Virus record (IMG/VR): IMGVR_UViG_3300042923_000601 | Location: 124,001 to 188,000 of that record | Length of the DNA: 64,000 bases | Direction: 5' to 3' (one strand) | Part shown: positions 313 through 50,279 of the stretch, piece by piece | Position numbering within the stretch: position 1 is the stretch's first letter | How the letters are laid out: every line of letters starts with the position of its first letter | Program-made: the position numbers and the translations under genes | The notes under the pieces: model-generated | Told to the model about the DNA's origin: nothing | Databases searched by the model: none | What the model saw: the letters and a program-made list of their open reading frames with translations, nothing else

Positions 313-324
313 AACAACATGATA
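313..324 (+). promoter_or_regulatory. AR9-type late promoter AACA-N6-TA
   Basis: AACA ACATGA TA upstream of the giant fibre gene; the same motif precedes many structural genes in the window. Confidence 0.65.
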
Positions 325-369
325 AGTACATGTATCAAAATCATACTTACACGAAGGGGGATAAGCCCG

Positions 370-3300
370 ATGTCATTACCTTATGTGCTTTCTGAATTGG
401 GGAAATTGAGCAACTCGCTCACAAATGTAATCCAGCAGATTGAAACTCAGCTGGGAAACGGCACGTTAACGTTAGACGGGCTGAAAAGTGATATCCAGGC
501 TATCTTGAATAGCGCTGGTCAGGCGAATGGGCTGGCACCACTCAATGGTACAGCCACGATCAACAAGCAGTATCTGCCACCTATACAAGAGCTGGTTAAA
601 CACGGCAACGAGTGGCATGACAAAGCGTATGTGACTCAGACCGAGATTGATACCTCGGTTAGCGCGTATGCGGCTAGACGGGACAACCCGAACGTCGTTA
701 CAAAGGCACAGGTCGGTTTGAGTAACGTGGACAACGTTAAACAAGAACCCTACCGTAACCTTGGTCTGAACGCCAAATCGGCGACTGACTTGCCGAATAC
801 CTACCCTGTAGGGATCAGCTATATGCTGGCTGATAGCACTAAAGGATTCCCATTTACCGGAGTCCATAATGGTGTAATGACTTACAACTTGAGCGATGGC
901 ACCACATCTACTTACCAATTTGCATTCAATTATGAGAATGCAAGGGTTCCCCGTATACGCGTACGCTCAGCTACCCTGGGTAATACAGCATGGGGTGACT
1001 GGGCTGTTATGTATACCAGCGCAGAGCCTCCTACAAAGGCTGATCTGGGTCTTGGGAATGTACAGAACTACCCAGTTGCAACTGATGCTGAAGCAGCTGC
1101 TGGGGTATCTAACGTAACGTACATGACACCTGCCCGGACTAAAACTACTGTAGATGCTGCGGTTTCCAGTGTCAGCAATACACAGGTACTTGGCCCAGGT
1201 ACAAATCTTGTAACGGCTGGTAAAGAGGGCGCAGAGCTTGACCTGAAGGTTAATGGTCGCACCCTTGTAAATATTCTGGGTACAATGGGTAGTGGGGAGT
1301 CCGTGGCAAACTGGGGTATATCCGGTACAGCACCAACTATATCCACTACACAGAAACGGTCAGGAACAGCTTCGTTTAAATTCAGCACGACTGACACGTC
1401 AGGTGTGTTGGTCAAAGACCTTGCCATCCCACTGGATAAATCCAAGTATTATATGGTGACTTGCTGGGCGTATGTTGAATCGTATACTAGCGGTGGAGCA
1501 ACACTTAACATTCGTGAATACAATACATCAAATGTACGATACAATGTGAGTGTGAATACGACGAAAGTCGGCGAATGGCAGCAGCTTCTTCTTAAGGTAC
1601 CTAATAACAACACCATCTCTACCACTGAAGGGTTCCGTATCATTGCTGGTGTCAACACCACTGGTACAATGGTTGTATACTACGATGAACTTCGACTGTA
1701 TGAAGTTTCTGCAGCTGAATACGCCGCCATTGGTACTACGCTGGCCACACCAGAGCAGATCGACGCCTATTTCCCGTACGTGGATGGTAAACAACACGTT
1801 CAAGGCGTTGCTATTACGAAGCAGGGTAAGAACTTGCTGCTCCCACTGACTCAAAGAGGTACAAACAACGGTACTGTAATCGATGCGTATGCATTTGACC
1901 ATCCAGCACTCGTTGCCTTCGGTAATGGGTACATGACGTATGATGTAATTCCCAATACCGACTACGTTTTTTCTGCGGTGCCAGGTGCTACAGGTCAAAT
2001 GGGTGTATACAATGACACTGCTACGGTAGCGTTATCGGATTATGCCAACACTCCACGTGCATTTAATAGTGGAGCAAATACAAAGGTGCGCATATATTTC
2101 AGAAATACAGTTGTAGGCACAGTTCGATTCTCTGATCTTCAACTGGAATTCGGCACTGTAGCTACACCATTCGCACCCGCTGAACCTCAAACTGTCGTCC
2201 TTCCAGTGACACTTGGTGAAGTTGGAGGGATAAAAGACTCCGTATCGAACGCAGGTACTGAGTGGTTGTACACTGAGAGAGTAAGGAAGAACGTAGTAAT
2301 CGACGGGTCATTAACATGGGCCTATAATGATTCTCCCGGTACTGGGCTTAGAGTTGTCAAAACCGCAATGGCTGGTGGTAGTTCTGCAATGCCTGTCCGT
2401 ACCGTGTTGTATGATGGCCGTGTAGGGGGTTCACACTTACCTGCCGGTACAAATAACCGTGCAAGTGCAACCACGGATACGTTCTACATTATGGTTTCAA
2501 ATGCTGAAGCTGGGTGGACAGATACACTTACACCTAGCGCCAATGCAATTAAAGCGCTGATGAATGGATGGGAGGCAGTTGCTAACAACGGTACCACGTA
2601 CACAAGCTGGACGTCTATCCTTGACGGAAGTGTAGCACCGACAAATACTGAAGCATGGGTTGCCGCAAATAAGGCACCGAGCTGGAGTGCATGGTGTTCA
2701 CTTGACTATGCGTTGGGAACCGCCGCTATACCGGTTACTATCTCATCTGCTGAAGGTGCAATCAGCCTTCACCCGGGTGGCAATCAGGTAACCGTTGAGA
2801 CCGGTATTATTCAACGCGAGAAAATCGCCCCTCAACTTTCAACTACCTACGGTAGATACTACATCAATGAAGTGGGTGCAACAGTATCCGCTGTTGACTC
2901 TCCTTTGAAGTACAAAACAAATCGGATTTTGGATGTCTATGCTGGCGGAACCAAAGCCAAATGGATATCTGAAACCAATGCATCTAACCAGAACGGGACG
3001 GCGATCGCCTCCATTCTCACAGCCGACTATGACGCGTCCAAAACTTACTATGCAACGTATATTGCACTGGATAAGTATCTGATGACGCCATCTGTCGCGG
3101 AAGTAAATGCATCATGGAAATCCGGTTTAAACGGTGTTGTGCCTGAATTGGCTCAAAGCGTTGCCGATCTTAAATCAGCAATGGATTATCCTGTACTCTA
3201 TTCGCCTGAAATGCTAGGTGAACCAACAGTACCGACAGCGCCTGATGGTACTCGAAATAAGCAAGCTGCTAGTACAGAGTTTGCAGCTAAAGTTGCCGAA

Positions 3301-6300
3301 TCCTATGCAAATGCAAAGTTCATTAAAGAAGACCATACTCAGGCCATCAGCCAAGGGCTGTCGATTATCAATGGTGGTGAGACAGGCGCAGACGTTGATT
3401 TCAGTATTAACGGTCGCACATTAGTCAACCTTCTTGGTAATTACGGTAATTTTGAGGTTGATAGTAATAATGACGGTCTCGGAGATGGCTGGATTCGACA
3501 AGGTGGAACGCTTACCCTGTCAACGACAGGTGTAGCATATGGCACTAAATCTCAACGGATCACATCGACTTCATCTGACACATCCATAACAGACCGCGGT
3601 ATGTATCGGTATGTATGGCTTGAGGCAAGTAAGTACTATGTGGCAATTGCACATTTGACTACTGATGGTACTACTATTGGTATGATTCGCATGGAGGAAG
3701 GTGCATCTGGTACCAATATAGATACAAGTTCCTCAGTTAACCAAACGTTGTTCATTAAGTTCTCGCCAGTAGCTACCAAAAACTTTGTCTTCCGGGTATT
3801 TAACCGGGCACCTGTTGGGTCTGTTGGCTGGATTGAAATTGACGGTATTAGTATTTACGAAGTAGATGCGGCCACGTATGCACGAATTGGTGTAGATATT
3901 ACTGCATCCAACATTCGCACATATCTCCCATATGTGGATGGTAAACAGCATCTGCAGAATATTGTCATCAGTAAGCAAGGACTTAACCTAATGCCAAACG
4001 CGCCTGAAAGTGTTAGCACTGTTGCTAAGCTGGATGGGCCGTATGCCATGACTTTAGTTGCAACCGCAGCAGGACAGAGCAGTTTCTGGGATATTCCTGT
4101 TAAACCTGGTGTAACGTATACAATACGAGCTGAACTGACAGGTACAGTTGGTATTATCGCACGCACTCTGTTTAAGGAAGACCTATCTACGAACGCTGCA
4201 TATGCAACAGCTTTAACTTCTACAGGTACGTACACCTTCACCGCATTTGAAGGTTCGGCATTTGTACGGGTATATTTTAATAGCACGGCTGCAGGCACAT
4301 CTACACTTAAGAATTGGATGATGGTAGTTGGTGATGCAACTGCTTTACCGACAACATTTGTTCCGTCTGATATCCCGCAAACCGTTATTCTCCCGGTTAC
4401 TCTCGGTGAAACGAGTGGGGTTACAGATACCGTTTACAACTCTGGGTCTGAGTGGCTCTACGTTGAACGGATTAAGAAAAATGTACCGCTTGTAGGTGGC
4501 CTTGCATGGGCGTTTAATACAACCTTCACTGGTGTAAAACGTCTATCTCTTGCTCTATCACCAGCAGCACTCAGCGGGTTTTCATCCGCTCGTGTTGTCC
4601 GGTATGATGGTCTCCAGTTTAAAAATAATGAAACTACGGCGTCCGGCAATCCTAACGTCAGTCAGATATCAAACAATCAACTTCTTTTGAATTTGGCTAC
4701 TGCTGATACGGGCTGGGTTGACGCACTAACCCCTAACACAAATGCAATCAAGGCATTCTTCAACGGCTGGAAAGCGACTGCTAATAATGGAACGGCTTAT
4801 ACCACATGGGCATCCTCTATTGATGGTAGCGCACCAGCCACTAACACCGAAGCATGGGTTGCAGAGAATAAGGCACCGGGAATGACTACATGGGGTACTG
4901 TAGACTATGTACTGGCATCTGCTGAAGTACCAACTGCTGTTTCAGCCGCAGAAGGTAGTATCACCTTACACCCTGGTAATAATCAGATTTCTGTAAACAC
5001 TGGTGTTATCGTTCGTGAGAAAGTTAACCCTGTGTTTTACGTATCTGGTAATTACTACGTCATCAATAATATCGCAACCACACAGAATCTCTACCTCAGC
5101 ATGTTGAAGTACCGCATGGCTGATGTAGTGACACTGTACGAAGAATCAACTGTGTTCAACCGGTATATCAAGCGTGCACATGGTAATGCGTACGGGACGT
5201 ATCAAATGGAGATTTCACCATCAAATTTTGATACCACCAAGGATTACTACCTCACGTACATCGCACGGGATAAACCAGCGTTCTCTGGTTTTGTCACCGA
5301 CATGACCGCAAACTGGAAGACAGGTATTACTGGCACCGTGACCGAACTTGTTCAAGCTGTTGCTGAGCTTCGTAACGGTGACGATACGAAAATGTACCAT
5401 AATCCACACTTTACAGGTGAGCCAACTGTACCAACGGCAGCCGATGGTACTCGTACCAAGCAAGCTGCCAGTACCGAGTTCACAGGTAGAGCGATCGACA
5501 ATTTCTCGGCTTCCAAGCTACAACGTGCGGATAACGTGCAGGTTTTGAGTCAAGGTACAAATATCATTGATGGTGGTGACACCGGAGGTGATCTTGATCT
5601 TACCGTAAACGGTCGCACACTGGTCAACCTCCTTGGTAACTACGGTTCCGGAGAGAGTTTATCTGGGTGGTCACTGGCCGGTACCACGGTGCCAACGATA
5701 TCCACCACCCAAAAACGTTCAGGTACCTCGTCATTTAAAATGGCAACGGGTGCAACTGGAGGAAGTTATCTGTTCCGAGACTTCAACACTTCCCTTCAAT
5801 CGACTAAGCAATATGTAGTAGCCGGGTGGGCATTTGTTGAGTCATGGTCGTCAGTAGCGGCTGGCCCCTCAATTACCTTGTATGATGTAGGTACAAATAC
5901 TCAGAAATATCAGGTACTGGGCGATAAAGCGATTATTGGTTCATGGCAGCCTCTGGTTCTGAAAGTACCAACTAGCAATACTCTTGTAGGGACAGGGTTC
6001 AGAATCTTAATAGGGCATGGTAGTGCAGGTGCAAGTGTGTCTTATTACAGCGACATTCGTCTGTATGAAGTTACTGCCGCCGAATATGCTGCTATCGGTA
6101 CGACGATTACAGGTGATGCATTTGACACTGCTTTCCCATACGTTAATGGTAGACAGCATGTGCAAGGTGTTGCTATCACTAAGCAAGGTCAAAACTTACT
6201 AGCAAGTAAACCACCCGTGCTTAATGCAAGAGCAAGAATGAATGGTCCGTATGATATGGTATTGGATGCCACTGGAGGTAACGATTCGTCGTATTTCCTA

Positions 6301-12330: not shown

Positions 12331-12342
12331 AACAATATGGTG
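12331..12342 (+). promoter_or_regulatory. Late-type promoter AACA-N6-TG
   Basis: AACA ATATGG TG between the fibre stop codon and the next RBS. Confidence 0.5.
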
Positions 12343-12390
12343 GGGACCTTGTGTCCCCACTCTATTTATATCAAATAGGAGGCGAATACA

Positions 12391-13873: not shown

Positions 13874-13885
13874 AACAATCTAATA
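13874..13885 (+). promoter_or_regulatory. Late promoter AACA-N6-TA
   Basis: AACA ATCTAA TA upstream of the endolysin RBS. Confidence 0.65.
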
Positions 13886-14913: not shown

Positions 14914-14963
14914 CTATCTTAAACAAATGATAAATCATGTAACGGAGTTGAGGAGGGTTTACA

Positions 14964-20144: not shown

Positions 20145-20156
20145 AACAATAGGATA
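20145..20156 (+). promoter_or_regulatory. Late promoter AACA-N6-TA
   Basis: AACA ATAGGA TA upstream of 20172. Confidence 0.6.
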
Positions 20157-21878: not shown

Positions 21879-21890
21879 TAATGGGTTGTT
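21879..21890 (-). promoter_or_regulatory. Late promoter AACA-N6-TA
   Basis: Minus strand AACA ACCCAT TA. Confidence 0.6.
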
Positions 21891-21937: not shown

Positions 21938-23455
21938 TTACGAAGCATTTTCACCCAGAGCGTAGAGTTCAGACAGGATCAAGATGTAGTCCTTAATGAA
22001 CTTCATGCGCTCAGAATAGTTACCATGCGTACGAGACACATAGTTGTATTTCGGGCTGAGGGTTGGTTCGAAGGTCTTGATCAATCTCCAGTCCTTCATT
22101 GGGAAGTAGTACAAGCTGTCCCCGTCATGGTCTCCCGCATATCCGTCAAGCAGAGATGGTGAGATACGCATACACAGGTCGTCAATGTCATTACCAACAG
22201 CCACGACTTGCAGTAGACGAATGGAACGGTCAGATAGAGTAGGTGGACGACCAACCATTACACAAATCGGCGTCTTGGACTCTTTCAAGATCGTCATCAT
22301 CAGTGCATAGATACGTGGATTGTAAATCCGCAGGCTATCGTTGATGATCTTGTAAGCTTCATTCTCCGTAATATCATCCAAGATACACAAGAGGTGAATC
22401 AACTCAAGTTCAAGGAATACGATACCTGTAATGTACGGGATTTGAACATCGCATGGTCTAAGATGTACACCTGGGATGATGATGCTTCGGGCCGCGTAGT
22501 CAATACGAACGCCACCGAAGTTCGATCGGAACATCCCTTCTTTACCGGAATACGTATCAACCAGCCATGCATACAGGTCATTCAGTTTCTGCTGAATACC
22601 ATGCAGTGCGGGCACGATGGTCAGCTCGTTATCCGGCTCCGTTACGATCAGGTTGTATTGAGACATGATCATACCATAGAGCTTGTTCGGTTTAAAGGCA
22701 CGAACCTTTTCATTATTCTCGATATGCGGGCGAATGATCGCGCTGTATACCGGGATATAGTTAGTAAAGATCGATTCCTTGTCCCTAACCAGGAGCTCGT
22801 AATGATCACGCTTCTTATTGGCTGTATCAAGACCCATATAGAAATCAAGGATTTCGTCAATGTGCTTATACAGATACATCATGCCTACATTATGGTATCG
22901 TTTACGCGGCTCAACATCATCTCTGAGATTCCCATCGACTGACCATCTGGCGGTGCTCATCTTGAGGATGTTCTCAAGTTCGCCTTTACCAAACAAGATG
23001 TTCATATGGGTATACATAGCTGGGTTGATAACCACATACTGCTGCAGGGGAATCCAGCCCATGATGCTAAGGTCAGCATCCATGAATTTAACTGGTGTTC
23101 CGCACACTGGGCAAATCTCATCAATGGAAATTGCACCGCCTGTTTCACCGCACTGACACCGGTAAGCATCTTGCCGTCCGGTTTGGTTGTCGAATTGGGT
23201 GTAACCATAACGAGGTGAGAAGATACCGTCCACGGTTTTATTGCCAGCTTTATCAATGGCTTCAGGGTTTGTCACAAGGAAGTCTTTCCCGGACTTAAGA
23301 CCCTTCTCCGCCTCTTTACGGAGATTTACTTTAATCAACTGCTCAGATTCGATGGACTGATCATAGTCCTCAAAGTAGCGTTTAACCTCGGGTAATTGGA
23401 ATTGCTTGACGTCACCATAGTCGATGACGTCTCCGTTTAACATAACTTCTTGCAT
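21938..23455 (-). CDS. Phage RNA polymerase beta'-like subunit, N-terminal half (Zn finger, clamp, catalytic DPBB)
   Basis: Start ATG 23455 after GGAGG. Motifs DGIFSPRYG, CQCG..CPVC, GKEGMFRSNFGGVRIDYAARSII, GRPPTL and catalytic loop YAGDHDGD. Confidence 0.9.
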   Translation of the reverse strand: MQEVMLNGDVIDYGDVKQFQLPEVKRYFEDYDQSIESEQLIKVNLRKEAEKGLKSGKDFLVTNPEAIDKAGNKTVDGIFSPRYGYTQFDNQTGRQDAYRCQCGETGGAISIDEICPVCGTPVKFMDADLSIMGWIPLQQYVVINPAMYTHMNILFGKGELENILKMSTARWSVDGNLRDDVEPRKRYHNVGMMYLYKHIDEILDFYMGLDTANKKRDHYELLVRDKESIFTNYIPVYSAIIRPHIENNEKVRAFKPNKLYGMIMSQYNLIVTEPDNELTIVPALHGIQQKLNDLYAWLVDTYSGKEGMFRSNFGGVRIDYAARSIIIPGVHLRPCDVQIPYITGIVFLELELIHLLCILDDITENEAYKIINDSLRIYNPRIYALMMTILKESKTPICVMVGRPPTLSDRSIRLLQVVAVGNDIDDLCMRISPSLLDGYAGDHDGDSLYYFPMKDWRLIKTFEPTLSPKYNYVSRTHGNYSERMKFIKDYILILSELYALGENAS

Positions 23456-24100: not shown

Positions 24101-24114
24101 TATAATATATAACC
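24101..24114 (-). promoter_or_regulatory. Early-type promoter GGTTATATATTATA
   Basis: Recurrent motif, lying between a terminator and the gene start. Confidence 0.65.
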
Positions 24115-24169: not shown

Positions 24170-25369
24170 TTATTTACCGATAAGGTCATCCACCGTCACG
24201 CGGTAAGTATAAACCTTTTTGTTATGGAACGCCTTAAGCCGCTTATTCATCATCGTCGATCCAATCTTGGACGACGCTATACCAACGGCTTTAAGTTTAA
24301 GTCTATACGATTGTGAACCCAGACATGCATTACAGATATGCGGTTTAGGCTGGTGGCAGAACATTGGTGATCTAAACTTCATCCGTCTTCCCTCATACTG
24401 CTTGAAGTTTTCAGGGGTCAGTTCCACCAACTTCTTACCATCAATCATATTCATGTACATGAGTTCGTTCTTAAAGAATGGGTCTACAACCATGTGGATG
24501 TACCCATCAGTACCGCAGTCTGAACCCTTTGGTCCAGATGCAACGTCTTGCAGGGTTGCAATAAACTTCTGAGCTGCATAACCACCCATCGCAACCCCTT
24601 TAGCGCGCTGGAATGTACCATATACAGCTGAGTCAGCAAGCAAGTGATACTCTTCTTTGGATATCCCGTCATCGTAGTTTGAGGTAGCGATCTTCCAATC
24701 GCCTGTCCCTGTATCAACGATCGGACCCTTCATGAGCATCATGGTCTTGAAGTTATTATCGAAATTGAGCTTCGCGTCAGAAGCAAAGTTATCCCACTCT
24801 GGGAGTTTCTCCAAATGCTTCTTCGCCATATCAACCAGCTCTTTTTCAATCTTCGCGCCGACGATAACATCACCCTCGGCGATTTCCTTCGCGTATTTCT
24901 TAAAGAGCATTGCGCGGTGTTCCTTGACCTCTTTCGGGATGGTAAAGAGTCTAGGCGAGAGTGATACATTGATCAATTCTGCCAAATCACCACCACCAAG
25001 CCAGTCAAGAGAGTCAATTAACTCAAAGAACTGCGCAGACACAATCTTGTCTTCAAACAGGGCTTGGGAGATTAACGTGTAAATTTTCTTTAGCACGCCG
25101 CCTGTAATCGGGGTGTTTACATAACCAACCACATCCGAGAAATGTTTATCGATAACCAAGCGGTTAAAGATGTACAATCCGATTGTGGTCAGACCCTTTA
25201 TATTTTTGCAGCATGCATTCTCCGGTAAGAAGAACCAATCTGTTGTGGTGAACCTTGGTGTTGGGTTATTGCGTGTCCGGCCAAAGTAACTCTTCAGCAG
25301 CGTGGTTGTGATGTCGTCTTGTGTTAACTTAATGACTTCCTGTATTTCTTCGGGAGTCAGTGATCTCAT
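24170..25369 (-). CDS. Phage RNA polymerase beta'-like subunit, C-terminal/middle part (bridge helix to trigger loop)
   Basis: Bridge-helix-like AKGVAMGGYAAQKF, QD...SDCGT, RSPMFC, Zn motif ICNACLG, and trigger-loop-like KIGSTMMNKRLKAFH. Confidence 0.88.
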   Translation of the reverse strand: MRSLTPEEIQEVIKLTQDDITTTLLKSYFGRTRNNPTPRFTTTDWFFLPENACCKNIKGLTTIGLYIFNRLVIDKHFSDVVGYVNTPITGGVLKKIYTLISQALFEDKIVSAQFFELIDSLDWLGGGDLAELINVSLSPRLFTIPKEVKEHRAMLFKKYAKEIAEGDVIVGAKIEKELVDMAKKHLEKLPEWDNFASDAKLNFDNNFKTMMLMKGPIVDTGTGDWKIATSNYDDGISKEEYHLLADSAVYGTFQRAKGVAMGGYAAQKFIATLQDVASGPKGSDCGTDGYIHMVVDPFFKNELMYMNMIDGKKLVELTPENFKQYEGRRMKFRSPMFCHQPKPHICNACLGSQSYRLKLKAVGIASSKIGSTMMNKRLKAFHNKKVYTYRVTVDDLIGK

Positions 25370-28473: not shown

Positions 28474-28502
28474 AACATTCGATAAAGCATTTATCCCATG
28501 TT
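28474..28502. promoter_or_regulatory. Divergent pair of AACA-N5-TA late-like promoters
   Basis: Plus strand AACA TTCGA TA (28474-84) and minus strand AACA TGGGA TA (28492-502). Confidence 0.45.
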
Positions 28503-31966: not shown

Positions 31967-32149
31967 CTATTCTCTGAGTCGAACTTCATATCGGTCAGAT
32001 ACGTCTTCATTCGACAGCCATGTGTCTCCACCCATGCAGGCAGCAGTGAGTTCATACACAAAGCCATCTACTCCAACGTAAAGCCGACTATCTTCAGAAT
32101 TAACTGCGACATCGTTTTGTTTATCCCATATGACGATTTGTATTGGCAT
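31967..32149 (-). CDS. Hypothetical protein (60 aa)
   Basis: Coupled to the upstream gene; terminator at 31928-31960. Confidence 0.55.
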   Translation of the reverse strand: MPIQIVIWDKQNDVAVNSEDSRLYVGVDGFVYELTAACMGGDTWLSNEDVSDRYEVRLRE

Positions 32150-32829: not shown

Positions 32830-32905
32830 TAGTATCGACTCCTTTAGATTATTAAAAACGTGTTAAAGGTAGAGTAGAAACCTACTCTACCTAAATGACT
32901 GCTAC

Positions 32906-33801: not shown

Positions 33802-34101
33802 CTACTGTAAATTAATCGTGACAACACCCGGTGCAGGAGATGTGACCAGCCCAACACTGGATAATCCCGGCGGGAATTTGTCGATTACTGATGCTTTGGT
33901 TCGAATCATAAAAGCACCATCTTCGTTTGGATACAGTCCGCCGACGTAATGCTCGTCAGCATATACCTCACCGGGGGAAGCCATGTTGTATTTAGCCTGA
34001 ATATCCAACATTTGTTCATGTGTAATTGAGATGTTAATATCTGAGACAACGCATTGCATATCAATTACGTATACGGGTAACGTATATGACATATTAGCCA
34101 A
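33802..34101 (-). CDS. Hypothetical protein (99 aa), late-type promoter
   Basis: GAGGAG RBS; AACA GGGCAA TA at 34118-34129; terminator at 33769-33798. Confidence 0.6.
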   Translation of the reverse strand: MANMSYTLPVYVIDMQCVVSDINISITHEQMLDIQAKYNMASPGEVYADEHYVGGLYPNEDGAFMIRTKASVIDKFPPGLSSVGLVTSPAPGVVTINLQ

Positions 34102-34137
34102 CTCCTCTGAATGATTATATTGCCCTGTTAGAGCAAA

Positions 34138-35851: not shown

Positions 35852-35944
35852 TACGTATTCCTCCTAGGGATTGGTTATAATTTCATCATTGGAGTGTTTC
35901 CGGAGTAGTATAATACTACTCCGGTATTTCCATGAATTGATACC

Positions 35945-39974: not shown

Positions 39975-40092
39975 GGTCAGGACTCTCCTCCTATATAGCG
40001 TAGTTGCCTTTAATTGGCTGTTGGTTAACTCCGGATAGGTTCCATAAACGACAAAAAAGAAGAGAGCCATTTGGCCCTCTTCTACAACGTGA

Positions 40093-42933: not shown

Positions 42934-43024
42934 TAGTGATCCTCCTTTAATATTCCGGTAAAGTTATCCTATTCTGATGTCGTATTTGGAATTAGTTACT
43001 ATTGCCGTAATTACCTTGATTTCG

Positions 43025-43037
43025 GGTTATATATCAT
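43025..43037 (+). promoter_or_regulatory. Early-type promoter variant GGTTATATATCAT
   Basis: Upstream of 43075. Confidence 0.45.
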
Positions 43038-43074
43038 CTACGTAGAAACCAATACAAATTAGGAGGAATTTAAT

Positions 43075-43710
43075 ATGTCAACAGTAAAAATCTCTCGTGA
43101 AAACCGCAAAGGTCCAGTTGGATATGCAGCTCGTATTTACAAGGTGGTAGAAGAAGGACATCAAGCAGGACGGTCACCTCGGAAAATTTCCAAGTCCGTT
43201 CGCGAAATCCTTGGGCAGGTGAAAGAAAAGGACATGGCTGAAACTGCCACGCTTCTATTCGATGATCTGCTGGTCGATCACGACCTCTACACCTTGTTCG
43301 CACGGGTACAAGCCAATCTGGAAGTTGAAGCTTTCACTGAGAAATTCAGAGCACTGCAAGCCAATGCCGAGAAAGCCCCACTCTTCAAGGTTAACGGCTA
43401 TGACTTCACTGACAAGGATGGGGTGAAAGCTGCTGCCCGTACTGAGGCTAAGGCTGATGGTGCTGATGATATGTGGGCAGCTGAGGATGAAGAATCTGAA
43501 GAACCACGCGTTGTCCTGACCAATACGAAGAAAGACGGCGTAGAAAAAGAAGACAAGAAGCCGAACTTCTTCACGATGGATAAGGAAGAACGTAACGCTC
43601 TGATCAAAGAAGAGCTGGAACTGCGTCCTCGTATCATCAAAGCCAAAATTGACACACAGGCTCGGATGTCATGGTTCCACCTGAAACATGCATTTGGTTT
43701 CAAAGGATAA
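43075..43710 (+). CDS. Hypothetical charged protein (211 aa)
   Basis: AGGAGG RBS; terminator at 43710-43734. Confidence 0.7.
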   Translation: MSTVKISRENRKGPVGYAARIYKVVEEGHQAGRSPRKISKSVREILGQVKEKDMAETATLLFDDLLVDHDLYTLFARVQANLEVEAFTEKFRALQANAEKAPLFKVNGYDFTDKDGVKAAARTEAKADGADDMWAAEDEESEEPRVVLTNTKKDGVEKEDKKPNFFTMDKEERNALIKEELELRPRIIKAKIDTQARMSWFHLKHAFGFKG

Positions 43711-43801: not shown

Positions 43802-44191
43802 ATGGGTAATTATCAGGTATCATTCGACAAAGACGCGGATTTGGAACTCGTTGAAAAGCAGCTTGCTAAGCTGGTAGAGGAGTGGACCGAAGAGTCCGGT
43901 GATAACTGGGTGATTTCGACTGGGTTCCTCCCACGGAAAGTTATCGAAGCTAAGGGATGGTCAACGGCGATCCACGACATGTTCGATCGTGTTATCCCGG
44001 AAGGTCACATTCTGCATGTGAACCAATCGTTTGAAACGCTGGAAGAATGCATGGCTAATCTTGAAGAGACCCGGCGTATCATTGCAAATGGAACAACTCG
44101 GCTGTATGTACTGGGTACGAAGTTGAACCCTGGTGTAGTAGCTGAAATCAATGCACGTGCATCCGGCTCAATCTTCTTCCCATCGGTTTAA
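43802..44191 (+). CDS. Hypothetical protein (129 aa)
   Basis: GAGGCGG RBS; terminator at 44200-44223. Confidence 0.65.
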   Translation: MGNYQVSFDKDADLELVEKQLAKLVEEWTEESGDNWVISTGFLPRKVIEAKGWSTAIHDMFDRVIPEGHILHVNQSFETLEECMANLEETRRIIANGTTRLYVLGTKLNPGVVAEINARASGSIFFPSV

Positions 44192-44228
44192 CGTAGAAAA
44201 GAGACTACCTCACGGTAGTCTCTGTTTT

Positions 44229-44789
44229 TTATGAAATCATGAGTTTATCATAGCAAGCCTTGACGACGCGAGCGTCGTGCAGCGCGTTACGTTTATTGCC
44301 CGGTACACAGTGATCCACGAAGTCTTCGCGTGTGACATCAGGGTCAACGCCTTTCGTAGTCATCAGTGTACAAATATCCATTGGGATATATGAAATCTGT
44401 CTTGGGATTGCATATTCGGGTGCCCACAGTTCCCGGAAAAGTGTCCAATCATAGTTAAGGCAATCCGACCATACGGTGACACCACCTGTATCGACGTCTT
44501 TTGCCACTCTGTTGATCCACTCTCCAAGTTTTGTACGCACGAACCGTTTATGCCCCTTATACCAGAGCGTGTCACCCTGATCTTTTACCCACACTTCACC
44601 GTCGCTGTCATTCATGACAAGATTGTCAATGACATTAGTCAGCAGCCAAGTGTCACCAGCTACATGATCGCGATTGTAGTCGGTAAGTTCCGCATAAAAA
44701 CTTTTACCGGTTTCGGTTACAAACCCAATACTAACCAGAGTCGTATCTTGACGTAGCCCTGTGTATTGAGCTCGCATAAATAAATTCAT
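44229..44789 (-). CDS. DEDDh 3'-5' exo(ribo)nuclease-like protein (Rv2179c/DUF5051-type) with substituted catalytic residues
   Basis: TGLRQDTTLVSIGFVTETGKSFYAE, DCLNYDW, PMDICT and NALHDAR; the usual DTEF reads RAQY and HNAL reads RNAL. Confidence 0.7.
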   Translation of the reverse strand: MNLFMRAQYTGLRQDTTLVSIGFVTETGKSFYAELTDYNRDHVAGDTWLLTNVIDNLVMNDSDGEVWVKDQGDTLWYKGHKRFVRTKLGEWINRVAKDVDTGGVTVWSDCLNYDWTLFRELWAPEYAIPRQISYIPMDICTLMTTKGVDPDVTREDFVDHCVPGNKRNALHDARVVKACYDKLMIS

Positions 44790-44818
44790 CTAAATCCATC
44801 CTCTCAAATTGTGAATAT

Positions 44819-44838
44819 GGCGGAGGTTGTCCTCCGCC
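44819..44838 (-). terminator. Hairpin after RNAP beta
   Basis: GGCGGAGG / CCTCCGCC. Confidence 0.55.
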
Positions 44839-44846
44839 CATCTATC

Positions 44847-47800
44847 TTATAGTTCCTCTCCATATATTTCCTGATACATCTTAGCAGTATTTTTCTTGGC
44901 CCCAATCAAGATACCGTTAATCATAGAGGTCTTGATCAAGCTAAGAACCATACGTGCTCCGACCGAAATAACCCCGATATACGCATCAATCTTGTCGTTA
45001 GGATCGCTAAGCAAATAGGGTTCTTCGCCTTCCTTGAACACGTCACAGGCGATTGCTTTGGTTGCAACGAATGAAGTCAGCTTATCACCAACGCCGAAAA
45101 CGTCTCTATACTTAGTGTAGATTTCAATCAGGAGACCTTCACCTACACGAGTACCTTTGACCTTTCCTGTGGCATCAGGCGTAACTTGCTCGACTTCAGT
45201 GAGGGTTACATCCAGCATTTTAGCATCAATACCCGTTTCCTTAGATACCCGGCGGAGTACTTTCGCATTTTCTGCTTCGTAGTAGTCGATGACCTTACGG
45301 GCAGATTCAGATAGTTCTTCCTTTGGAACGGTGTAATAAATCTTGATATCCTCGATTACGCCGTTGTGTTTGGATACAACTGGTGTCTTAGACGCTTCCT
45401 TGATATCTCCGCTGAACTCATCTGACATTTTAGCCAGCATTTTATTCGTCAGTTCATCATCATGGGACGTATCGAATATGATCAGAGGGTCGTTAACCTT
45501 GATTTCCTGACCCTTCTTAACGATATAGTCGATATTCGAGTTCCGACCAAGTGTGAGCGGTCTCTTTACAACGATATCCGAACTCATCTTACCAGCTAGT
45601 GGCGTGGATACGATAGTTGAATCCTCGAATACCTTGGAGGAGTACCGGATAGCAATACGGGCAAGTGGTCCTGTCATAGTGACAGGGTTACCTGTACGTT
45701 TGTCAATTGTGAAGAAGTCCTTATTGCAAGCAACAATGGCTCCTTCTTTAAAGGATGCACCAGCCTCAAGTATAGGGGAGAGTTTATTGGAGATGAAGAA
45801 TCCACTACCAGCATTCTTACCCATATCTGGACTGAGGTTAACCGTGTCAATTGTACCGTCCCCATACTTCAAAATCATGGTATGCGAGACGTCATCAATT
45901 TTCAGGATTGTACCGTCTTTTTTAGCTTTGAATACGAAGGTATCCCCGATGATATGCGGGAGGACCTTTTCATATCCCGTTCCAAGTGGAGCACGTTCAC
46001 TACCAACGCAAGCCAAGGTATGACGGCTTTGCGCTGAGGTCATTGCTGTACGTTCAGGGTCATCAGATGACACACCAAACGGGATCAATGATTCGGCAGC
46101 ACTAATCATCTTAGCCGTAGACAGTTGGTTGATCTCGTCTTTATTCTGAGCTACTTTGATGTAACCGCGAGCCGATGTGATATTTGCGTCCAGTGTCAAG
46201 GTACGTGCGATACCAATCGAACCCGAGATCGGGGACGCCTGACTGAGTACGCCGACCATACTCGGATGGTATGAACGTTTCGACAGGTTAAAGGCTCGGT
46301 CTTGGTTCATACCGCCGATACCTTTCCAAGTCGTGGAGGATTTAAGTTCGGCTGTGTAGATTGGGTTAAGGTCAGAGTAGTCTTTGGTTAATTGGTTAGA
46401 CAAGATGTCGACCAATACCGCGTCTTTACGAACTGACATCTTAACCGGGTTAGGATTGTTAGCTGTAAACCGGTACGTTTGGTATGCCTTAGCCAGTGCC
46501 TTATATAAGAAGGCGACCACGGCCTCATTCGACCGCGCCCGGTGAACACTCATGTCACCATCATCTGTCATTGAGTTATCTTCAAGCAGCATGTTAGCAT
46601 ACAGGAAAATGTCAATGAAGTTTGTTGGTAGACCATAGTCGCGGAGTACTTCTTCAGTAACGGGGTCAATCAGCAATTGCTGGAAGTTCTCAAACGCATA
46701 CCCGATATTCTTCCGACCAAAGAGGTTCTCGAAGAGTTCAAAGTACACATCCTTACCCAGAAACTCTTGAATCTTGTAAATCTTCGTTGGGATTTCACAG
46801 AAGCCGTTCATAAGAAGAGAGTTTCTCAGTGGATACATTGGGTATACCAACCAAGCATCTTCAAACTCAATGGCTTCTTCTTCGCCAGACTTAAGGTCAA
46901 GCGCCTTTTTACCATCCTCTTTAGCTATGATGCGGTAGTTGATCTCGGCACGCTTCATCATGGAGAGTAACCCATCAAGGAAGGAAAGAAGGAGAGCGAC
47001 AGGAACTTTCTTTTCCATGATTTTTGCCCGGTTATACATATACTTACGACCTGGACGGATATTCGCGAACGGTTTCTCAAACTCTGGGTTGGTTTTCCCG
47101 ATCTCAGAGATCACGAAGTCCATAAGCTGCATGTTGGTACCTTCAACCTTACTGGACTCCGTATCCAGATAGATAATATCCTTACCGTTACGGATCGCGA
47201 TAGGAAGCTTCGTGCTGGTTGCTTCAGGCACAGGCTTCTTCATATCAGCCAGTAACTGGCGGATGAACTTCTGGTTGAAGAAGATTTCGATATTCGGTGT
47301 TTTGATACGGCGATATTTAGTAGCCAGTTCATCATACTCAATGGTGCGGATGTACTCCCGGTTTGCACGAGTGGATTCACCGACTTCGACCTTTACATCT
47401 TTATGCCGGTTCTCACCAATCGACTTCAGGAATACCGCAACCTTAGGAGAGATAGACTGGCCAAACCGCTGAATGAATACCTTTTGATAGGTTGCAATCT
47501 GGACAGTATCCGGCCCGGTTTTCGTGATCGGGAGAGGAATGATCTGATTGGACATGATCTTCTTATTCCCGCCGACCTTGAGGAATCGACCGTTGATAAA
47601 TTTAGGCATGTTAACCACCACAGTGTGGCGACGGCCAGCCTCATCTTCAAACTTGTACGTATGCTCTTCCAGCGAGTTCAGGGAATCACTGATGTCTTTG
47701 ATCTCAGCATCAATGAGATACAGAGGATGATCCTTATACTGGAACGAGCTAACGATCTTAGCGATGTCGGCACGATACAGCTTTTTCAGGTAGGCTTCAT

Positions 47801-49130
47801 CAAAGTTCGGGAATGTCATTTCTTTGAGAGCCGGGTTAACGGTATCAATAGGGAATGTAACCGGTTCGATCGTATTAGCTTCTGCACGAGCCAACACCTC
47901 ACCCAGTGTCATATCGCCCATCTTAACGTCTTTCATCTCTTGAACCAGCTTAACCTCACGGGCAAGACGTGCTCTGGACTTTGGAACGATGTTTTGCATC
48001 TCTGCTTGAATTCTTTCCAGTTCCATCTCCTTGGTCTCTACAACATCAGCCACTTCTTCAGGTGGTAGTTCAGCCTTAGAGACGTCAACATCAGCTTTAC
48101 CGATCGCGTTATCGACGATCTTACTAACGGCATCGTCCGTTGGCGTAACACCTGATGCGGTTAAATCTTCAACAACTTTATCTGCAATAGCCGTTTTGTT
48201 TATAGCGACTGTTGCATCAGCATTTTGCGCCGCTGGTTCCTGTGAGGTAGTGGCGGCATCTACCTTAGGTTCAATCTTGCGGAACTTCGTCATCAGCGTT
48301 ACGAACTCGTCCGCAGACTTTTCATTAACGGTATCCGGTTCCCACAGAAGAATCTGGTTGCCCGACATGAAGTAGAATTTCCATCCGGCGAAGTTGGTGC
48401 TGAAATAAGCATGGTCATTCGCCAGTTTATTGTAGAACAAGGAAATCCAGTTTGACGTATTCTGGAGACGATAGAGTGTACGATCACGTGGGTCGCTGAT
48501 CCAGTCATCCAGTTGGATAAGCATATGTCGATTTGGGTAATTAGCTGATACAACCTTGTCCGCAGTAAATTCTTTGAAGAGGCGGAAGTACTCATTGACG
48601 CGATTCATCGCAAGACGAGTATCCTTTTCACCAAAGAATCTTTCATTATAAGGACCGATTTCGTAGATATAGTTTTTCCGGTTGAGTGCACTCTGATTGA
48701 GGACTAACGTAAAATGTGGAAGCGTAGGCTGAACCTGCCCTTTGAAAATAGTCTGGGCTTCCATGTCGGATAACCGGTATTTGACAAGTGAATTATATAT
48801 TCTATAATTGTATACACGATCCAGTACATATGCACTGGTGTAGCGCATGAGGATATTTGGCCGGTTAAAGAACTCGACCGTTGACTGGATACTCTTTGTG
48901 ACTGCCACGTATACAGACCCATGATTAATATCCTTAGGATCAGTAGGGAGGCGAAACTGCGATGGACTTCTGTACACCTTGTTTGGAACGAGCTGTTCCA
49001 AGCCCAGCCCTGCTTCAAGTAGTATTTGGGCATTTTCTGTTAACAAATCATCGTCCACTGAATCAGGTGGGGATGGCATTTGGTACGTGCCTGCTTGAAT
49101 AGCACGAAGTTGGTCTTGTAGATTATTCAT
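44847..49130 (-). CDS. Phage RNA polymerase beta-like subunit, unsplit, with a long N-terminal extension (virion-RNAP type)
   Basis: RAFNLSKRSYH, SPISGSIGI, AESLIPF, DDPERTAMTSAQSRH, FEDSTIVS and GDKLTSFVATKA; late promoter AACA GACTAA TA at 49175-49186. Confidence 0.9.
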   Translation of the reverse strand: MNNLQDQLRAIQAGTYQMPSPPDSVDDDLLTENAQILLEAGLGLEQLVPNKVYRSPSQFRLPTDPKDINHGSVYVAVTKSIQSTVEFFNRPNILMRYTSAYVLDRVYNYRIYNSLVKYRLSDMEAQTIFKGQVQPTLPHFTLVLNQSALNRKNYIYEIGPYNERFFGEKDTRLAMNRVNEYFRLFKEFTADKVVSANYPNRHMLIQLDDWISDPRDRTLYRLQNTSNWISLFYNKLANDHAYFSTNFAGWKFYFMSGNQILLWEPDTVNEKSADEFVTLMTKFRKIEPKVDAATTSQEPAAQNADATVAINKTAIADKVVEDLTASGVTPTDDAVSKIVDNAIGKADVDVSKAELPPEEVADVVETKEMELERIQAEMQNIVPKSRARLAREVKLVQEMKDVKMGDMTLGEVLARAEANTIEPVTFPIDTVNPALKEMTFPNFDEAYLKKLYRADIAKIVSSFQYKDHPLYLIDAEIKDISDSLNSLEEHTYKFEDEAGRRHTVVVNMPKFINGRFLKVGGNKKIMSNQIIPLPITKTGPDTVQIATYQKVFIQRFGQSISPKVAVFLKSIGENRHKDVKVEVGESTRANREYIRTIEYDELATKYRRIKTPNIEIFFNQKFIRQLLADMKKPVPEATSTKLPIAIRNGKDIIYLDTESSKVEGTNMQLMDFVISEIGKTNPEFEKPFANIRPGRKYMYNRAKIMEKKVPVALLLSFLDGLLSMMKRAEINYRIIAKEDGKKALDLKSGEEEAIEFEDAWLVYPMYPLRNSLLMNGFCEIPTKIYKIQEFLGKDVYFELFENLFGRKNIGYAFENFQQLLIDPVTEEVLRDYGLPTNFIDIFLYANMLLEDNSMTDDGDMSVHRARSNEAVVAFLYKALAKAYQTYRFTANNPNPVKMSVRKDAVLVDILSNQLTKDYSDLNPIYTAELKSSTTWKGIGGMNQDRAFNLSKRSYHPSMVGVLSQASPISGSIGIARTLTLDANITSARGYIKVAQNKDEINQLSTAKMISAAESLIPFGVSSDDPERTAMTSAQSRHTLACVGSERAPLGTGYEKVLPHIIGDTFVFKAKKDGTILKIDDVSHTMILKYGDGTIDTVNLSPDMGKNAGSGFFISNKLSPILEAGASFKEGAIVACNKDFFTIDKRTGNPVTMTGPLARIAIRYSSKVFEDSTIVSTPLAGKMSSDIVVKRPLTLGRNSNIDYIVKKGQEIKVNDPLIIFDTSHDDELTNKMLAKMSDEFSGDIKEASKTPVVSKHNGVIEDIKIYYTVPKEELSESARKVIDYYEAENAKVLRRVSKETGIDAKMLDVTLTEVEQVTPDATGKVKGTRVGEGLLIEIYTKYRDVFGVGDKLTSFVATKAIACDVFKEGEEPYLLSDPNDKIDAYIGVISVGARMVLSLIKTSMINGILIGAKKNTAKMYQEIYGEEL

Positions 49131-49328
49131 TTCACTTCTCCTTTCGAGAGGAACAATCTCGGCATTTTGATGATTATTAGTCTGTTTTGGAGGTGGCTTT
49201 CTAACAGTATCTTAATATAGTCCCATAATAGTATAGTTTTTAAGTTGCATAGAAACTGTATAGTATAGACTCTGATAAAGGAGGAATTTTTAATGCGGGC
49301 ACTTATCGATATTAATAGGGGCACGATT

Positions 49329-49559
49329 ATGAGCATGCTTCGTACTGATCTGGAGGGCTTCCAGCCTAAGGCAGTCGAAGATGTTGCGAAAGACGTGCAT
49401 CATCTGGTAAGCGGCGGTGACGATTCTGGTTACCAGCAGCGTAGTTTCAAAATCGTAAATGGCTATGGTCGCAATAAAGATGGATTCATCATGCTCTTTC
49501 CGATCGAATCAAATAATACTACGAGTAACAGTAAAAAGAAGACGGCTAAGAAAAAGTAA
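49329..49559 (+). CDS. Hypothetical protein (start may be 49293)
   Basis: AGGGGG RBS before MSMLRTD; late promoter AACA GTATCT TA at 49203-49214. Confidence 0.55.
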   Translation: MSMLRTDLEGFQPKAVEDVAKDVHHLVSGGDDSGYQQRSFKIVNGYGRNKDGFIMLFPIESNNTTSNSKKKTAKKK

Positions 49560-50171: not shown

Positions 50172-50205
50172 TCGGCATACCGTCTGCACGCACAGATTAG
50201 CCGAG

Positions 50206-50246
50206 AAGAGAGTACGTGGGGATAATTCCCTGCGTACTCTTTTTTT
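50206..50246 (+). terminator. Terminator
   Basis: AGAGTACGTGGG / CCCTGCGTACTCT followed by a T-run. Confidence 0.8.
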
Positions 50247-50267
50247 CGTTTTGATCGGTATTTAGAA

Positions 50268-50279
50268 AACATCAGGATA
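50268..50279 (+). promoter_or_regulatory. Late promoter AACA-N6-TA
   Basis: AACA TCAGGA TA upstream of the tape-measure gene. Confidence 0.65.

What the first reader, a model, noticed from the sequence alone, without database searches (positions are those of the whole stretch)
313..50279. Window-wide AACA-N6-TA/TG late promoters of AR9 type, raising the question of uracil DNA
The motif was found at 313, 12331, 13874, 20145, 49203 and 50268 on the plus strand and at 21879, 34118, 35887, 40011 and 49175 on the minus strand. N5 variants occur at 14922, 28474 and 28492. All sites are upstream of gene starts, many of them structural or lysis genes. In AR9 this consensus is read by the non-virion RNAP via template-strand deoxyuridines opposite the AA. 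This genome looks less AT-rich than AR9, so it either contains dU or has a uracil-independent version of the same recognition.
Basis: partly seen in the sequence, partly recalled or inferred. Interest (0 to 1): 0.62.

Follow-up and report, generated by a model that had tools for sequence, protein, structure and literature searches.

The report
AR9-type late promoters, probably thymine DNA
The AACA-N6-TA motif is a real, strongly enriched late-promoter signal of an uncultured soil jumbo phage that carries its own AR9-like RNA polymerase, but the phage's genes point to ordinary thymine DNA rather than uracil DNA, so the same promoter code seems to work here without uracil.

Summary
The motif is real. 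All 14 coordinates hold. Across the 246,689-bp phage genome, 34 of 97 AACA-N6-TA sites lie within 80 nt upstream of a gene start in sense orientation; other spacings give 5-16. Shuffled upstream regions give 11.1±3.2 sites. AACA-N6-TAA ranks 3rd of 108,313 dyad patterns behind two ribosome-binding patterns. Any single change in AACA abolishes the signal.

The phage is a distant relative (25-33% protein identity) of the uracil-DNA phages AR9/PBS1, LPJP1, S6 and phiR1-37. It has orthologues of all five non-virion RNAP subunits, including the gp226 sigma-like subunit. Virion and virion-RNAP genes sit behind AACA sites. All five non-virion RNAP genes and most replication genes sit behind a second, AR9-like early motif (TATATATTATA).

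The genome encodes a dUTPase, a ThyX-like thymidylate synthase and a thymidylate kinase; five cultured dU phages have none. The gp226 valine that excludes thymine in AR9 is Arg here and Gly in the closest relatives, and Gly is the engineered change that makes AR9's enzyme accept T. Two complete relatives show the same promoter peak.

No RNA data exist, so start sites and base composition remain untested.

The parts
313..324 (+). Late promoter candidate AACAACATGATA. Predicted +1 is A324. It drives the giant gene 370-12330 (3986 aa from the start with an SD; the ORF opens at 319).
12331..12342 (+). TG-variant site AACAATATGGTG upstream of 12391-13845. Doubtful, because it overlaps a terminator-like hairpin at 12339-12361.
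13874..13885 (+). Late promoter candidate AACAATCTAATA upstream of 13916-14860, an endolysin (Amidase_2 plus Cu_amine_oxidN1 wall-binding domain).
14922..14933 (+). N5-class site AACAAATGATAA. It follows a hairpin plus T-run and lies upstream of 14964-15998.
20145..20156 (+). Late promoter candidate AACAATAGGATA upstream of 20181-20555.
21879..21890 (-). Late promoter candidate AACAACCCATTA upstream of 20592-21854 (homologue of AR9 RefSeq gp250).
28474..28485 (+). N5-class site AACATTCGATAA upstream of 28540-28830 (DUF6527).
28491..28502 (-). N5-class site AACATGGGATAA. It heads the operon 26192-28453 (virion protein), 25384-26211 and 24170-25369 (virion RNAP subunit).
32853..32864 (-). Late promoter candidate AACACGTTTTTA upstream of 32149-32829.
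34118..34129 (-). Late promoter candidate AACAGGGCAATA upstream of 33802-34092.
35887..35898 (-). TG-variant site AACACTCCAATG upstream of 35039-35851.
40011..40022 (-). Late promoter candidate AACAGCCAATTA upstream of 39231-39974 (start with an SD; homologue of AR9 RefSeq gp241).
49175..49186 (-). Late promoter candidate AACAGACTAATA upstream of the virion RNAP beta-like gene 44847-49130.
49203..49214 (+). Divergent late promoter candidate AACAGTATCTTA, 90 nt upstream of 49293-49559.
50268..50279 (+). Late promoter candidate AACATCAGGATA upstream of 50303-60685, a 3460-aa tape-measure-like protein with C39-like peptidase, SLT and VanY domains.
60676..60687 (+). Late promoter candidate AACAAGATAATA upstream of 60755-62476 (homologue of AR9 virion protein, RefSeq gp204).
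21938..23455 (-). Non-virion RNAP beta'-N subunit gene (orthologue of AR9 gp270, RefSeq gp269). This is part of the enzyme proposed to read the AACA sites. It is itself served by the early-type promoter at 24101-24111.
24101..24111 (-). Early-type promoter TATATATTATA, with the same core as annotated AR9 early promoters. Further copies on the minus strand have their TATATTAT 8-mer starting at 20101, 31897, 37715, 39133, 40684 and 41964; one on the plus strand starts at 62825.
24170..25369 (-). Virion RNAP subunit gene (orthologue of AR9 RefSeq gp263). It is a late gene behind the N5 site at 28491-28502.
44847..49130 (-). Virion RNAP beta-like subunit gene (orthologue of AR9 RefSeq gp188). It is a late gene behind the site at 49175-49186.

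Best explanation
AACA-N6-TA(A) sites are the late promoters of this phage. A minor AACA-N5-TAA class and some AACA-N6-TG sites belong to the same set.

Proposed cycle (inferred from AR9):
1. A virion-packaged RNAP reads the early motif TATATATTATA. This expresses the replication genes and the five subunits of a second, non-virion RNAP: beta'N, beta'C, betaN, betaC and a gp226-type sigma-like subunit.
2. That holoenzyme recognises the four bases at -11 to -8 (AACA on the coding strand, its complement on the template strand) and starts at the purine after the conserved T.
3. This expresses virion, lysis and virion-RNAP genes.

What is shown: the motif, its placement, the gene set, the gene-class logic and its conservation in relatives. 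What is inferred: the enzyme-promoter pairing, template-strand reading and the start site.

Unlike AR9, this phage most likely has thymine in its DNA. Its recognition pocket is remodelled so that it does not depend on uracil.
For: Motif statistics.

Extended consensus: aAACA-N4-A-W-TAAt, with AACA 29-79 nt before the start codon and always upstream of the SD, apart from one evident false positive.

Positive control: AR9 shows the same N6 peak, 63 against 9-36 for other spacings.

Closest known phages are the dU jumbo phages AR9/PBS1, LPJP1, S6-like and phiR1-37. 54 of 213 proteins hit AR9, with synteny.

The gp226 orthologue lies at genome 244636-246141 (-):
- 24% identity over 453 aa, E 8e-22.
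- phrog_25005.
- A profile of its clade matches AR9 gp226 structure 7S01_A at E 5e-55.

Gene class against promoter class: AR9-virion or virion-RNAP homologues are 17 late, 3 early, 2 none. Replication and non-virion RNAP homologues are 14 early, 2 late, 3 none (p 2.5e-5). All five non-virion RNAP genes are early-type and all four virion RNAP genes are AACA-type.

Conservation in relatives:
- Complete relatives G001 and G003 show the same N6 peak, 29 against 2-12 and 37 against 6-19.
- Orthologues share the motif: odds ratio 15, p 5e-7, and odds ratio 8.5, p 4.5e-5.
- Across 45 distinct relatives' loci, N6 sums to 156 against 43-99 for other spacings.

Thymine DNA:
- dUTP diphosphatase at 128 bits against a cut-off of 103, with all five dUTPase motifs.
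- ThyX-like protein with an RHR motif.
- Thymidylate kinase.
- Five cultured dU or presumed-dU phages score 0/5 for each of the three.
- The closest relatives have Dut in 3/3 and ThyX in 2/3.
- AR9 gp226 Val206, Ile207 and Tyr210 correspond to Arg, Met and Arg here, and to Gly, Met and Arg in the closest relatives. V206G lets AR9's enzyme accept thymine at -10 (PMC9209446).
Against: - No RNA data exist: only soil and silage metagenome DNA runs hold the sequence. Start sites, timing and the enzyme-promoter pairing are therefore all inferred from AR9.
- The A-W-TAAT part of the motif resembles a bacterial -10 hexamer, so a sigma70-type reader cannot be excluded from sequence alone.
- Arg at position 206 still has a C-beta, which is the atom that clashes with the thymine methyl in AR9. 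In AR9, U at -11 is enforced by DNA backbone packing, not by residue 206. The residue change alone therefore does not prove thymine tolerance.
- In the wider family, Val206 also occurs in records with ThyX or Dut (L054/G018, L051/G015), so residue 206 is not a clean marker of dU.
- The ThyX-like protein scores below NCBIfam's equivalog cut-off (38.6 against 87.9 bits).
- The betaN pocket residues R363 and K375 of AR9 could not be aligned reliably.
Confidence: 0.82

Rival explanations
1. The promoters are AR9-type and the genome does contain deoxyuridine, as in AR9. Recognition would be uracil-dependent, and the Dut, ThyX and Tmk genes would serve another purpose or be inactive at the relevant time.
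For: - Every cultured phage with a gp226-type subunit and this consensus has, or is presumed to have, dU DNA (PMC9209446).
- These phages are also the closest known relatives.
- Arg227 keeps a C-beta at the position that excludes thymine in AR9.
- Tmk-family kinases can also phosphorylate dUMP (my own knowledge).
Against: - The phage's own dUTPase carries all five catalytic motifs and would deplete the dUTP needed for dU DNA. PBS2 instead inhibits the host dUTPase (my own knowledge).
- ThyX and Tmk complete a dTTP route.
- No dCMP or dCTP deaminase, no AR9-type nucleotidase and no Ugi were found.
- Five dU phages score 0/5 for Dut, ThyX and Tmk.
- The 2.1bis helix, which is conserved in all dU phages, is not conserved here.
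Confidence: 0.12
2. The motif is read by a sigma70-family holoenzyme, either host RNAP or host RNAP redirected by a phage factor. In this view A-W-TAAT is a -10 hexamer and AACA is an upstream extension. The phage's non-virion RNAP would not be the reader.
For: - The extended consensus A-(A/T)-T-A-A-T differs from TATAAT at one or two positions.
- The host is probably a Gram-positive bacterium with a strong SD.
Against: - There is no -35 element or TG extension in the count matrix.
- The strictly required bases are AACA and TA at a fixed N6 spacing, exactly as in AR9.
- The phage carries two complete RNAPs of its own, and the gene-class logic mirrors AR9.
- AR9 and phiKZ development is independent of host RNAP (PMC7598289).
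Confidence: 0.04
3. The sites are chance matches or a composition effect of AT-rich intergenic DNA.
For: - The raw pattern is not enriched in the window as a whole (45 against 87 expected).
- Intergenic DNA is AT-rich.
Against: - The signal is specific for spacing, orientation and each base, against composition-matched shuffles.
- It is conserved upstream of orthologous genes in two diverged genomes.
Confidence: 0.01

Closest known systems
Late promoters of Bacillus phage AR9/PBS1 and their reader, the five-subunit non-virion RNAP with gp226 (PDB 7S01, 7UM0, 7UM1)
   Same: - The consensus is the same: 5'-AACA-N6-T-purine.
- The subunit set is the same, including a gp226 orthologue.
- The early promoter core is the same (TATATATTAT).
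- The wiring is the same: early promoters serve non-virion RNAP genes, and AACA promoters serve virion and virion-RNAP genes.
   Different: - Proteins are only 24-33% identical to AR9's.
- GC content is 44.6% against 27.8%.
- The motif carries extra conserved bases (A at -12, A at -3, AAT at +1 to +3).
- The 2.1bis helix D-x-V-I-W-x-Y/F of dU phages reads D-G-R-M-W-E-R here.
- Dut, ThyX and Tmk are present here. Ugi, dCMP deaminase, RNR and the gp150-type nucleotidase were not found.
Engineered AR9 gp226 V206G holoenzyme (Fraser et al. 2022, PMC9209446)
   Same: The closest relatives of this phage (L025-L031) naturally carry Gly at the position equivalent to 206. That is the substitution which made AR9's enzyme use -10T and -10U equally.
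   Different: - This phage itself has Arg at that position, with Gly one residue earlier.
- Positions 207 and 210 also differ.
- Tolerance of thymine at -11, which AR9 excludes through DNA backbone packing, is not explained by this residue.
phiKZ late promoters (5'-TATG-3' at the start site) read by the phiKZ non-virion RNAP with gp68
   Same: - A thymine-DNA jumbo phage with two multisubunit RNAPs.
- A very short late consensus.
- A fifth subunit (gp68) for which PMC7598289 reports homologues in all jumbo phages encoding beta/beta'-like subunits.
   Different: - phiKZ has no AACA element at -11 to -8 (PMC7598289).
- phiKZ encloses its DNA in a chimallin shell. No chimallin (phrog_4795) match was found here.
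Bacterial sigma70 -10 element recognition
   Same: A short element about 10 nt upstream of the start, read by a dissociable specificity subunit.
   Different: In AR9 the template strand is read, not the non-template strand, and gp226 has no sequence similarity to sigma (PMC9209446). No -35 element is seen here.

Membership tests
AR9-type non-virion-RNAP late promoter | Consensus 5'-AACA at -11 to -8, exactly six unspecified bases, then T(-1) and A/G(+1) | tested here: met
   The N6-specific peak is 34 against 5-16. Every base of AACA is required. TA gives 34 and TG gives 10, against 2 each for TC and TT. The same scan recovers AR9's own peak.
AR9-type non-virion-RNAP late promoter | Sites lie upstream of late (virion, lysis, virion-RNAP) genes in sense orientation | tested here: met
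   17 of 22 virion-type genes lie behind AACA sites, against 2 of 19 replication or non-virion RNAP genes, p 2.5e-5. An endolysin and a tape-measure-like protein are among them.
AR9-type non-virion-RNAP late promoter | Transcription starts at the purine after the conserved T | not testable with these tools
   Only soil and silage metagenome DNA runs hold the sequence; there is no RNA run.
   Orthologues of AR9 gp270, gp154, gp105 and gp089 are present. The gp226 orthologue matches at E 8e-22 pairwise, in phrog_25005, and at E 5e-55 by profile to 7S01_A.
AR9-type non-virion-RNAP late promoter | Recognition requires deoxyuridine at template positions -11 and -10, enforced by gp226 Val206 | tested here: not met
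   Val206 is Arg here and Gly in the closest relatives. Ile207 is Met and Tyr210 is Arg. The alignment from D204 to W208 is ungapped. Biochemical dependence on U could not be tested.
Deoxyuridine-DNA jumbo phages (PBS1/AR9, BpSp, LPJP1, S6, phiR1-37) | No route that removes dUTP or makes dTMP or dTDP (no dUTPase, thymidylate synthase or thymidylate kinase) | tested here: not met
   Dut, ThyX-like and Tmk are all present here. The five dU phages score 0/5 for each.
Deoxyuridine-DNA jumbo phages (PBS1/AR9, BpSp, LPJP1, S6, phiR1-37) | Enzymes that raise the dUTP pool or protect U-DNA (dCMP/dCTP deaminase, UDG inhibitor) | tested here: not met
   No PF00383 match. The only dCTP-deaminase-like hit is the weaker second hit on the Dut protein. 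There is no tblastn match to AR9 Ugi, dCMP deaminase or the gp150 nucleotidase. Ugi is short and divergent, so its absence is weak evidence.
Deoxyuridine-DNA jumbo phages (PBS1/AR9, BpSp, LPJP1, S6, phiR1-37) | dU replaces dT in virion DNA (chemical evidence) | not testable with these tools
   Sequence reads do not distinguish U from T, and no isolate exists.
gp226 / phrog_25005 sigma-like specificity subunit | Full-length sequence homology to AR9 gp226 | tested here: met
   phrog_25005 at E 5.8e-24 over residues 31-473. Clade profile against 7S01_A at E 5.3e-55 over 455 positions. The gene has the same neighbourhood as in AR9, next to the GroEL and RefSeq gp226 homologues, with an early promoter 52 nt upstream.

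The most novel reading that the evidence does not exclude
A large uncultivated family of soil and other environmental jumbo phages uses the AR9 promoter code (AACA-N6-T-purine, gp226-type subunit) on thymine DNA. These would be natural counterparts of the engineered V206G enzyme.

If so, template-strand -10 recognition is not tied to uracil genomes. It may predate them, with uracil dependence a later specialisation of the AR9/S6/phiR1-37 branch.

These phages also lack a detectable chimallin shell. They would then need another, unknown way to keep an enzyme with a six-base consensus off host DNA.
Probability: 0.55. Interest if true: 0.72.

Novelty: new variant of a known kind. Interest (0 to 1): 0.62.

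Why it matters
The AR9 late promoter is the only known case in which a multisubunit RNAP reads its -10 element in the template strand. Its need for uracil has been explained as a way to tell phage DNA from host DNA.

If the same consensus and the same specificity subunit work in phages that make dTTP and destroy dUTP, three things follow:
- The mechanism would be separable from uracil.
- There would be natural sequence variants of the recognition pocket to test: Gly, Arg and others at position 206.
- The question of how such a short promoter gives specificity would be open again.

There is also a practical point. [quoted passage not shown] In this family they can be, which allows temporal gene classes to be assigned in uncultured genomes.

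Tried and rejected
- Megablast of 7.7 kb of the window against phage records found nothing. Relatives are visible only at protein level.
- tblastn with AR9 gp226 against the genome failed, with E above 4. I found the orthologue by synteny and the early promoter, then confirmed it by BLASTP, PHROG and profile.
- I tested whether the motif is avoided inside genes. AACA is only mildly under-represented by a Markov model (observed/expected 0.88, rank 18 of 256). The N6-TA dip inside coding DNA is confounded by codon periodicity. I do not claim avoidance. The '45 against 87' deficit mostly reflects shuffles that ignore coding structure.
- I tried to check the betaN pocket residues, AR9 gp105 R363 and K375. 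The pairwise alignment is gappy there (R363 aligns to Lys, K375 is unclear), so the result is inconclusive.
- I tested residue 206 as a dU marker across 56 IMG/VR relatives. It is V, G, R, T, I, A, S, P, L, K or H, and some Val-type records carry ThyX or Dut. It is therefore not a clean marker outside the AR9 branch.
- The search for RNA runs found only DNA contigs from soil and silage metagenomes. I did not use read laying, because contigs cannot show start sites.
- A chimallin search with phiKZ gp54 by tblastn and with phrog_4795 found no match. The control genomes cannot ring for this family, so the absence is weak.
- One genome search exceeded the 50-locus limit and was resent with 33 loci.

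Full report
**What the window is.** The window is bases 124001-188000 of a 246,689-bp IMG/VR virus record with 44.6% GC. Its first and last 176 bases are identical but for one mismatch, so the assembly closes on itself. The same DNA occurs in soil metagenomes from two further studies, one of them possibly the source, and partly in a silage metagenome. No RNA run holds it.

The window encodes three split multisubunit RNAP subunits and two giant proteins of about 4000 and 3460 aa. By protein similarity of 30-33%, the closest known phages are AR9/PBS1/Goe21, Listeria phage LPJP1, Staphylococcus S6-like phages and Yersinia phiR1-37. These are exactly the jumbo phages shown or presumed to carry deoxyuridine DNA (PMC9209446). 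Only 54 of my 213 called proteins hit AR9, but they do so in conserved order.

**Checking the observation.** The pattern is not enriched in the window as a whole: 45 matches against 87±9 in shuffles. So 'window-wide' enrichment is not the right description. The signal is positional.

I called genes with a self-trained coding model and Shine-Dalgarno-guided starts. I then scanned AACA-Nk-TA for k from 0 to 12.
- At k=6, 34 of 97 genomic sites lie within 80 nt upstream of a start in sense orientation. Other spacings give 5-16.
- Against dinucleotide shuffles of the same upstream regions, AACA-N6-TA gives 34 against 11.1±3.2, and AACA-N6-TAA gives 28 against 3.2±1.8. The antisense strand of those regions has 6.
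- Without any prior, AACA-N6-TAA ranks third of 108,313 dyad patterns (28 observed, 0.77 expected). Only two ribosome-binding patterns rank higher, and the early-promoter patterns rank lower.
- Each single substitution in AACA reduces the near-start count from 28 to 0-6.
- At the start position, TA (34) and TG (10) stand out from TC (2) and TT (2).
- The aligned sites give aAACA-N4-A-W-TAAt. AACA lies 29-79 nt before the start codon and always ahead of the Shine-Dalgarno sequence, apart from one evident false positive.
- The same scan on AR9 reproduces its known late-promoter spacing, 63 against 9-36.

Weak points are the TG site at 12331, which sits in a terminator-like hairpin, and the modest enrichment of TG sites against shuffles.

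**What reads the motif.** The genome has orthologues of the four AR9 non-virion RNAP core subunits and of four virion RNAP subunits. BLAST could not find the fifth, promoter-specificity subunit gp226. Synteny with AR9's GroEL neighbourhood pointed to genome 244636-246141 (-), which has an early-type promoter 52 nt upstream. That 501-aa protein is 24% identical to AR9 gp226 over 453 residues (E 8e-22) and belongs to phrog_25005. A profile of it and its metagenomic relatives matches the solved AR9 gp226 chain 7S01_A at E 5e-55.

A second motif, TATATATTATA followed by N3-4 and TG, marks about 35 sites. It has the same core as the early promoters annotated in the AR9 record.

I assigned each gene the nearest upstream motif along its operon.
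- Homologues of AR9 virion and virion-RNAP proteins are 17 late, 3 early and 2 unassigned.
- Replication and non-virion RNAP genes are 14 early, 2 late and 3 unassigned (p 2.5e-5).
- All five non-virion RNAP genes are early-type, and all four virion RNAP genes are AACA-type.
- In the window, the AACA sites serve an amidase endolysin, a tape-measure-like protein with three peptidoglycan-hydrolase domains, virion proteins and two virion RNAP subunits.

This is the AR9/phiKZ regulatory circuit described in PMC7598289.

**Conservation in relatives.** The sigma-like protein has 22 relatives in the protein collection and 56 loci in IMG/VR. I fetched two complete relatives whose sigma-like proteins are 51-59% identical and whose GC is 41% and 35%.
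- Both show the same N6 peak: 29 against 2-12, and 37 against 6-19.
- Reciprocal-best orthologues of motif-bearing genes tend to bear the motif too: odds ratio 15, p 5e-7, and odds ratio 8.5, p 4.5e-5.
- Summed over 45 distinct 21-kb loci of the wider family, N6 gives 156 against 43-99 for other spacings.

**The uracil question.** Fraser et al. (PMC9209446) report three things about AR9.
- The -10 uracil sits in a pocket where its C5 is 3.9 Å from the C-beta of gp226 Val206.
- The V206G substitution makes the enzyme accept thymine.
- This valine and the surrounding 2.1bis helix are conserved in all dU-phage homologues.

My alignments reproduce that conservation: D-x-V-I-W-x-Y/F in AR9, BpSp, LPJP1, S6, SA1 and phiR1-37. 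This phage instead has D-G-R-M-W-E-R, and its closest relatives have D-S-G-M-W-x-R. The alignment has no gap between the invariant Asp-equivalent and Trp. In a midpoint-rooted tree of the subunit, the cultured dU phages form one branch, and this phage with its Gly-type relatives forms another.

Gene content is more telling.
- The genome encodes a dUTP diphosphatase above NCBIfam's equivalog cut-off, with all five dUTPase motifs.
- It encodes a ThyX-family protein above Pfam's cut-off, apparently a tandem fusion with the RHR motif in its second half.
- It encodes a thymidylate kinase.
- It has no ThyA, no dCMP deaminase, no UDG and no detectable Ugi or AR9-type nucleotidase.
- The five cultured dU or presumed-dU phages have no dUTPase, ThyX or thymidylate kinase.
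- The three closest complete relatives have Dut (3/3) and ThyX (2/3).

A phage that destroys dUTP and makes dTMP and dTDP is unlikely to build uracil DNA. I therefore rate thymine DNA at roughly 0.75-0.8 and the uracil alternative at about 0.12.

**Limits.**
- Arg227 still has a C-beta.
- AR9's exclusion of thymine at -11 depends on DNA packing rather than on residue 206.
- The betaN pocket residues could not be aligned.
- In the wider family, residue 206 varies widely, and some Val-type records carry ThyX or Dut.
- The ThyX-like protein is divergent.
- No start site has been mapped.

The residue argument is supporting evidence only. The nucleotide-metabolism genes carry most of the weight.

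**Verdict.** As a promoter class this is a new member of a known kind. The combination with a predicted thymine genome and a naturally altered uracil-discriminating pocket, across a sizeable uncultivated family, makes it a new variant.

No chimallin homologue was detected. If the DNA is thymine, it is unclear how a six-base consensus distinguishes phage from host DNA.

Noticed in passing
window 20093-20103 (-), 24101-24111 (-), 62823-62833 (+); 8-mer starts on the minus strand at 31897, 37715, 39133, 40684 and 41964; about 35 sites genome-wide: A second, very strong upstream motif, tATATATTATA-N3-4-TG-n-A. It has the same core as the early promoters annotated in the AR9 record (AAATATATATTAT). 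It precedes all five non-virion RNAP genes and most replication genes. It is often followed by a conserved ACTA-N4-GGAG element in the leader.
   Followed up: partly
window 319/370-12330 (+): A giant ORF of 3986-4003 aa has no Pfam match and no AR9 homologue. It sits behind a late promoter and is presumably a virion or ejected protein.
   Followed up: partly
window 50303-60685 (+): A 3460-aa tape-measure-like protein (weak N-terminal match to the AR9 tape measure) carries three cell-wall hydrolase domains near its C-terminus: C39-like peptidase, SLT transglycosylase and VanY.
   Followed up: partly
window 13916-14860 (+): The endolysin has an Amidase_2 domain plus a Cu_amine_oxidN1 wall-binding domain. 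Together with AGGAGG ribosome-binding sites before nearly every gene, this points to a Gram-positive (Bacillota) soil host. One relative's protein is filed in NCBI under a Chitinophagaceae MAG, probably through mis-binning.
   Followed up: no
genome 44015-47421 (-), outside the window (L017): The non-virion RNAP beta'-C gene is in two pieces, 44015-45187 and 46516-47421. An HNH-endonuclease ORF (45489-46295) lies between them, like the intron and homing-endonuclease insertions in AR9 RNAP genes.
   Followed up: no
genome 41650-42831 (-), outside the window (L023:829-2010): The ThyX-like protein is 393 aa. Its N-terminal half matches ThyX but lacks the RHR motif, and its second half carries RHRTLNHS. 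Several relatives have two ThyX matches in one 470-490-aa frame. This looks like a tandem-fused ThyX.
   Followed up: partly
genome 1-176 and 246514-246689: The contig ends repeat each other over 176 bases with one mismatch. The record is therefore probably a complete, circularly closed assembly, although IMG/VR labels it linear.
   Followed up: yes
L062 (IMGVR_UViG_3300007072_000073, 15.4 kb): A contig with 57% GC has a sigma-like subunit whose 2.1bis helix (YSDRVIWTYLQN) is nearly identical to the AR9 type. It groups with the cultured dU phages in the tree. It may be a high-GC uracil-DNA phage.
   Followed up: no
L051, L054, L057, L063-L066, L069-L074, L076, L080: In these relatives the sigma-like gene reads as an open frame of only 248-360 aa where about 500 aa are expected. 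They may carry introns, frameshifts or recoded stop codons.
   Followed up: no
genome 88864-90057 (-) and AR9 42157-43317 (RefSeq gp052): phiKZ chimallin (gp54) gives a weak tblastn hit (E 0.023) to AR9 RefSeq gp052. Its orthologue in this phage sits behind a late AACA promoter. No chimallin PHROG match was found in this genome. The hit may be chance.
   Followed up: partly
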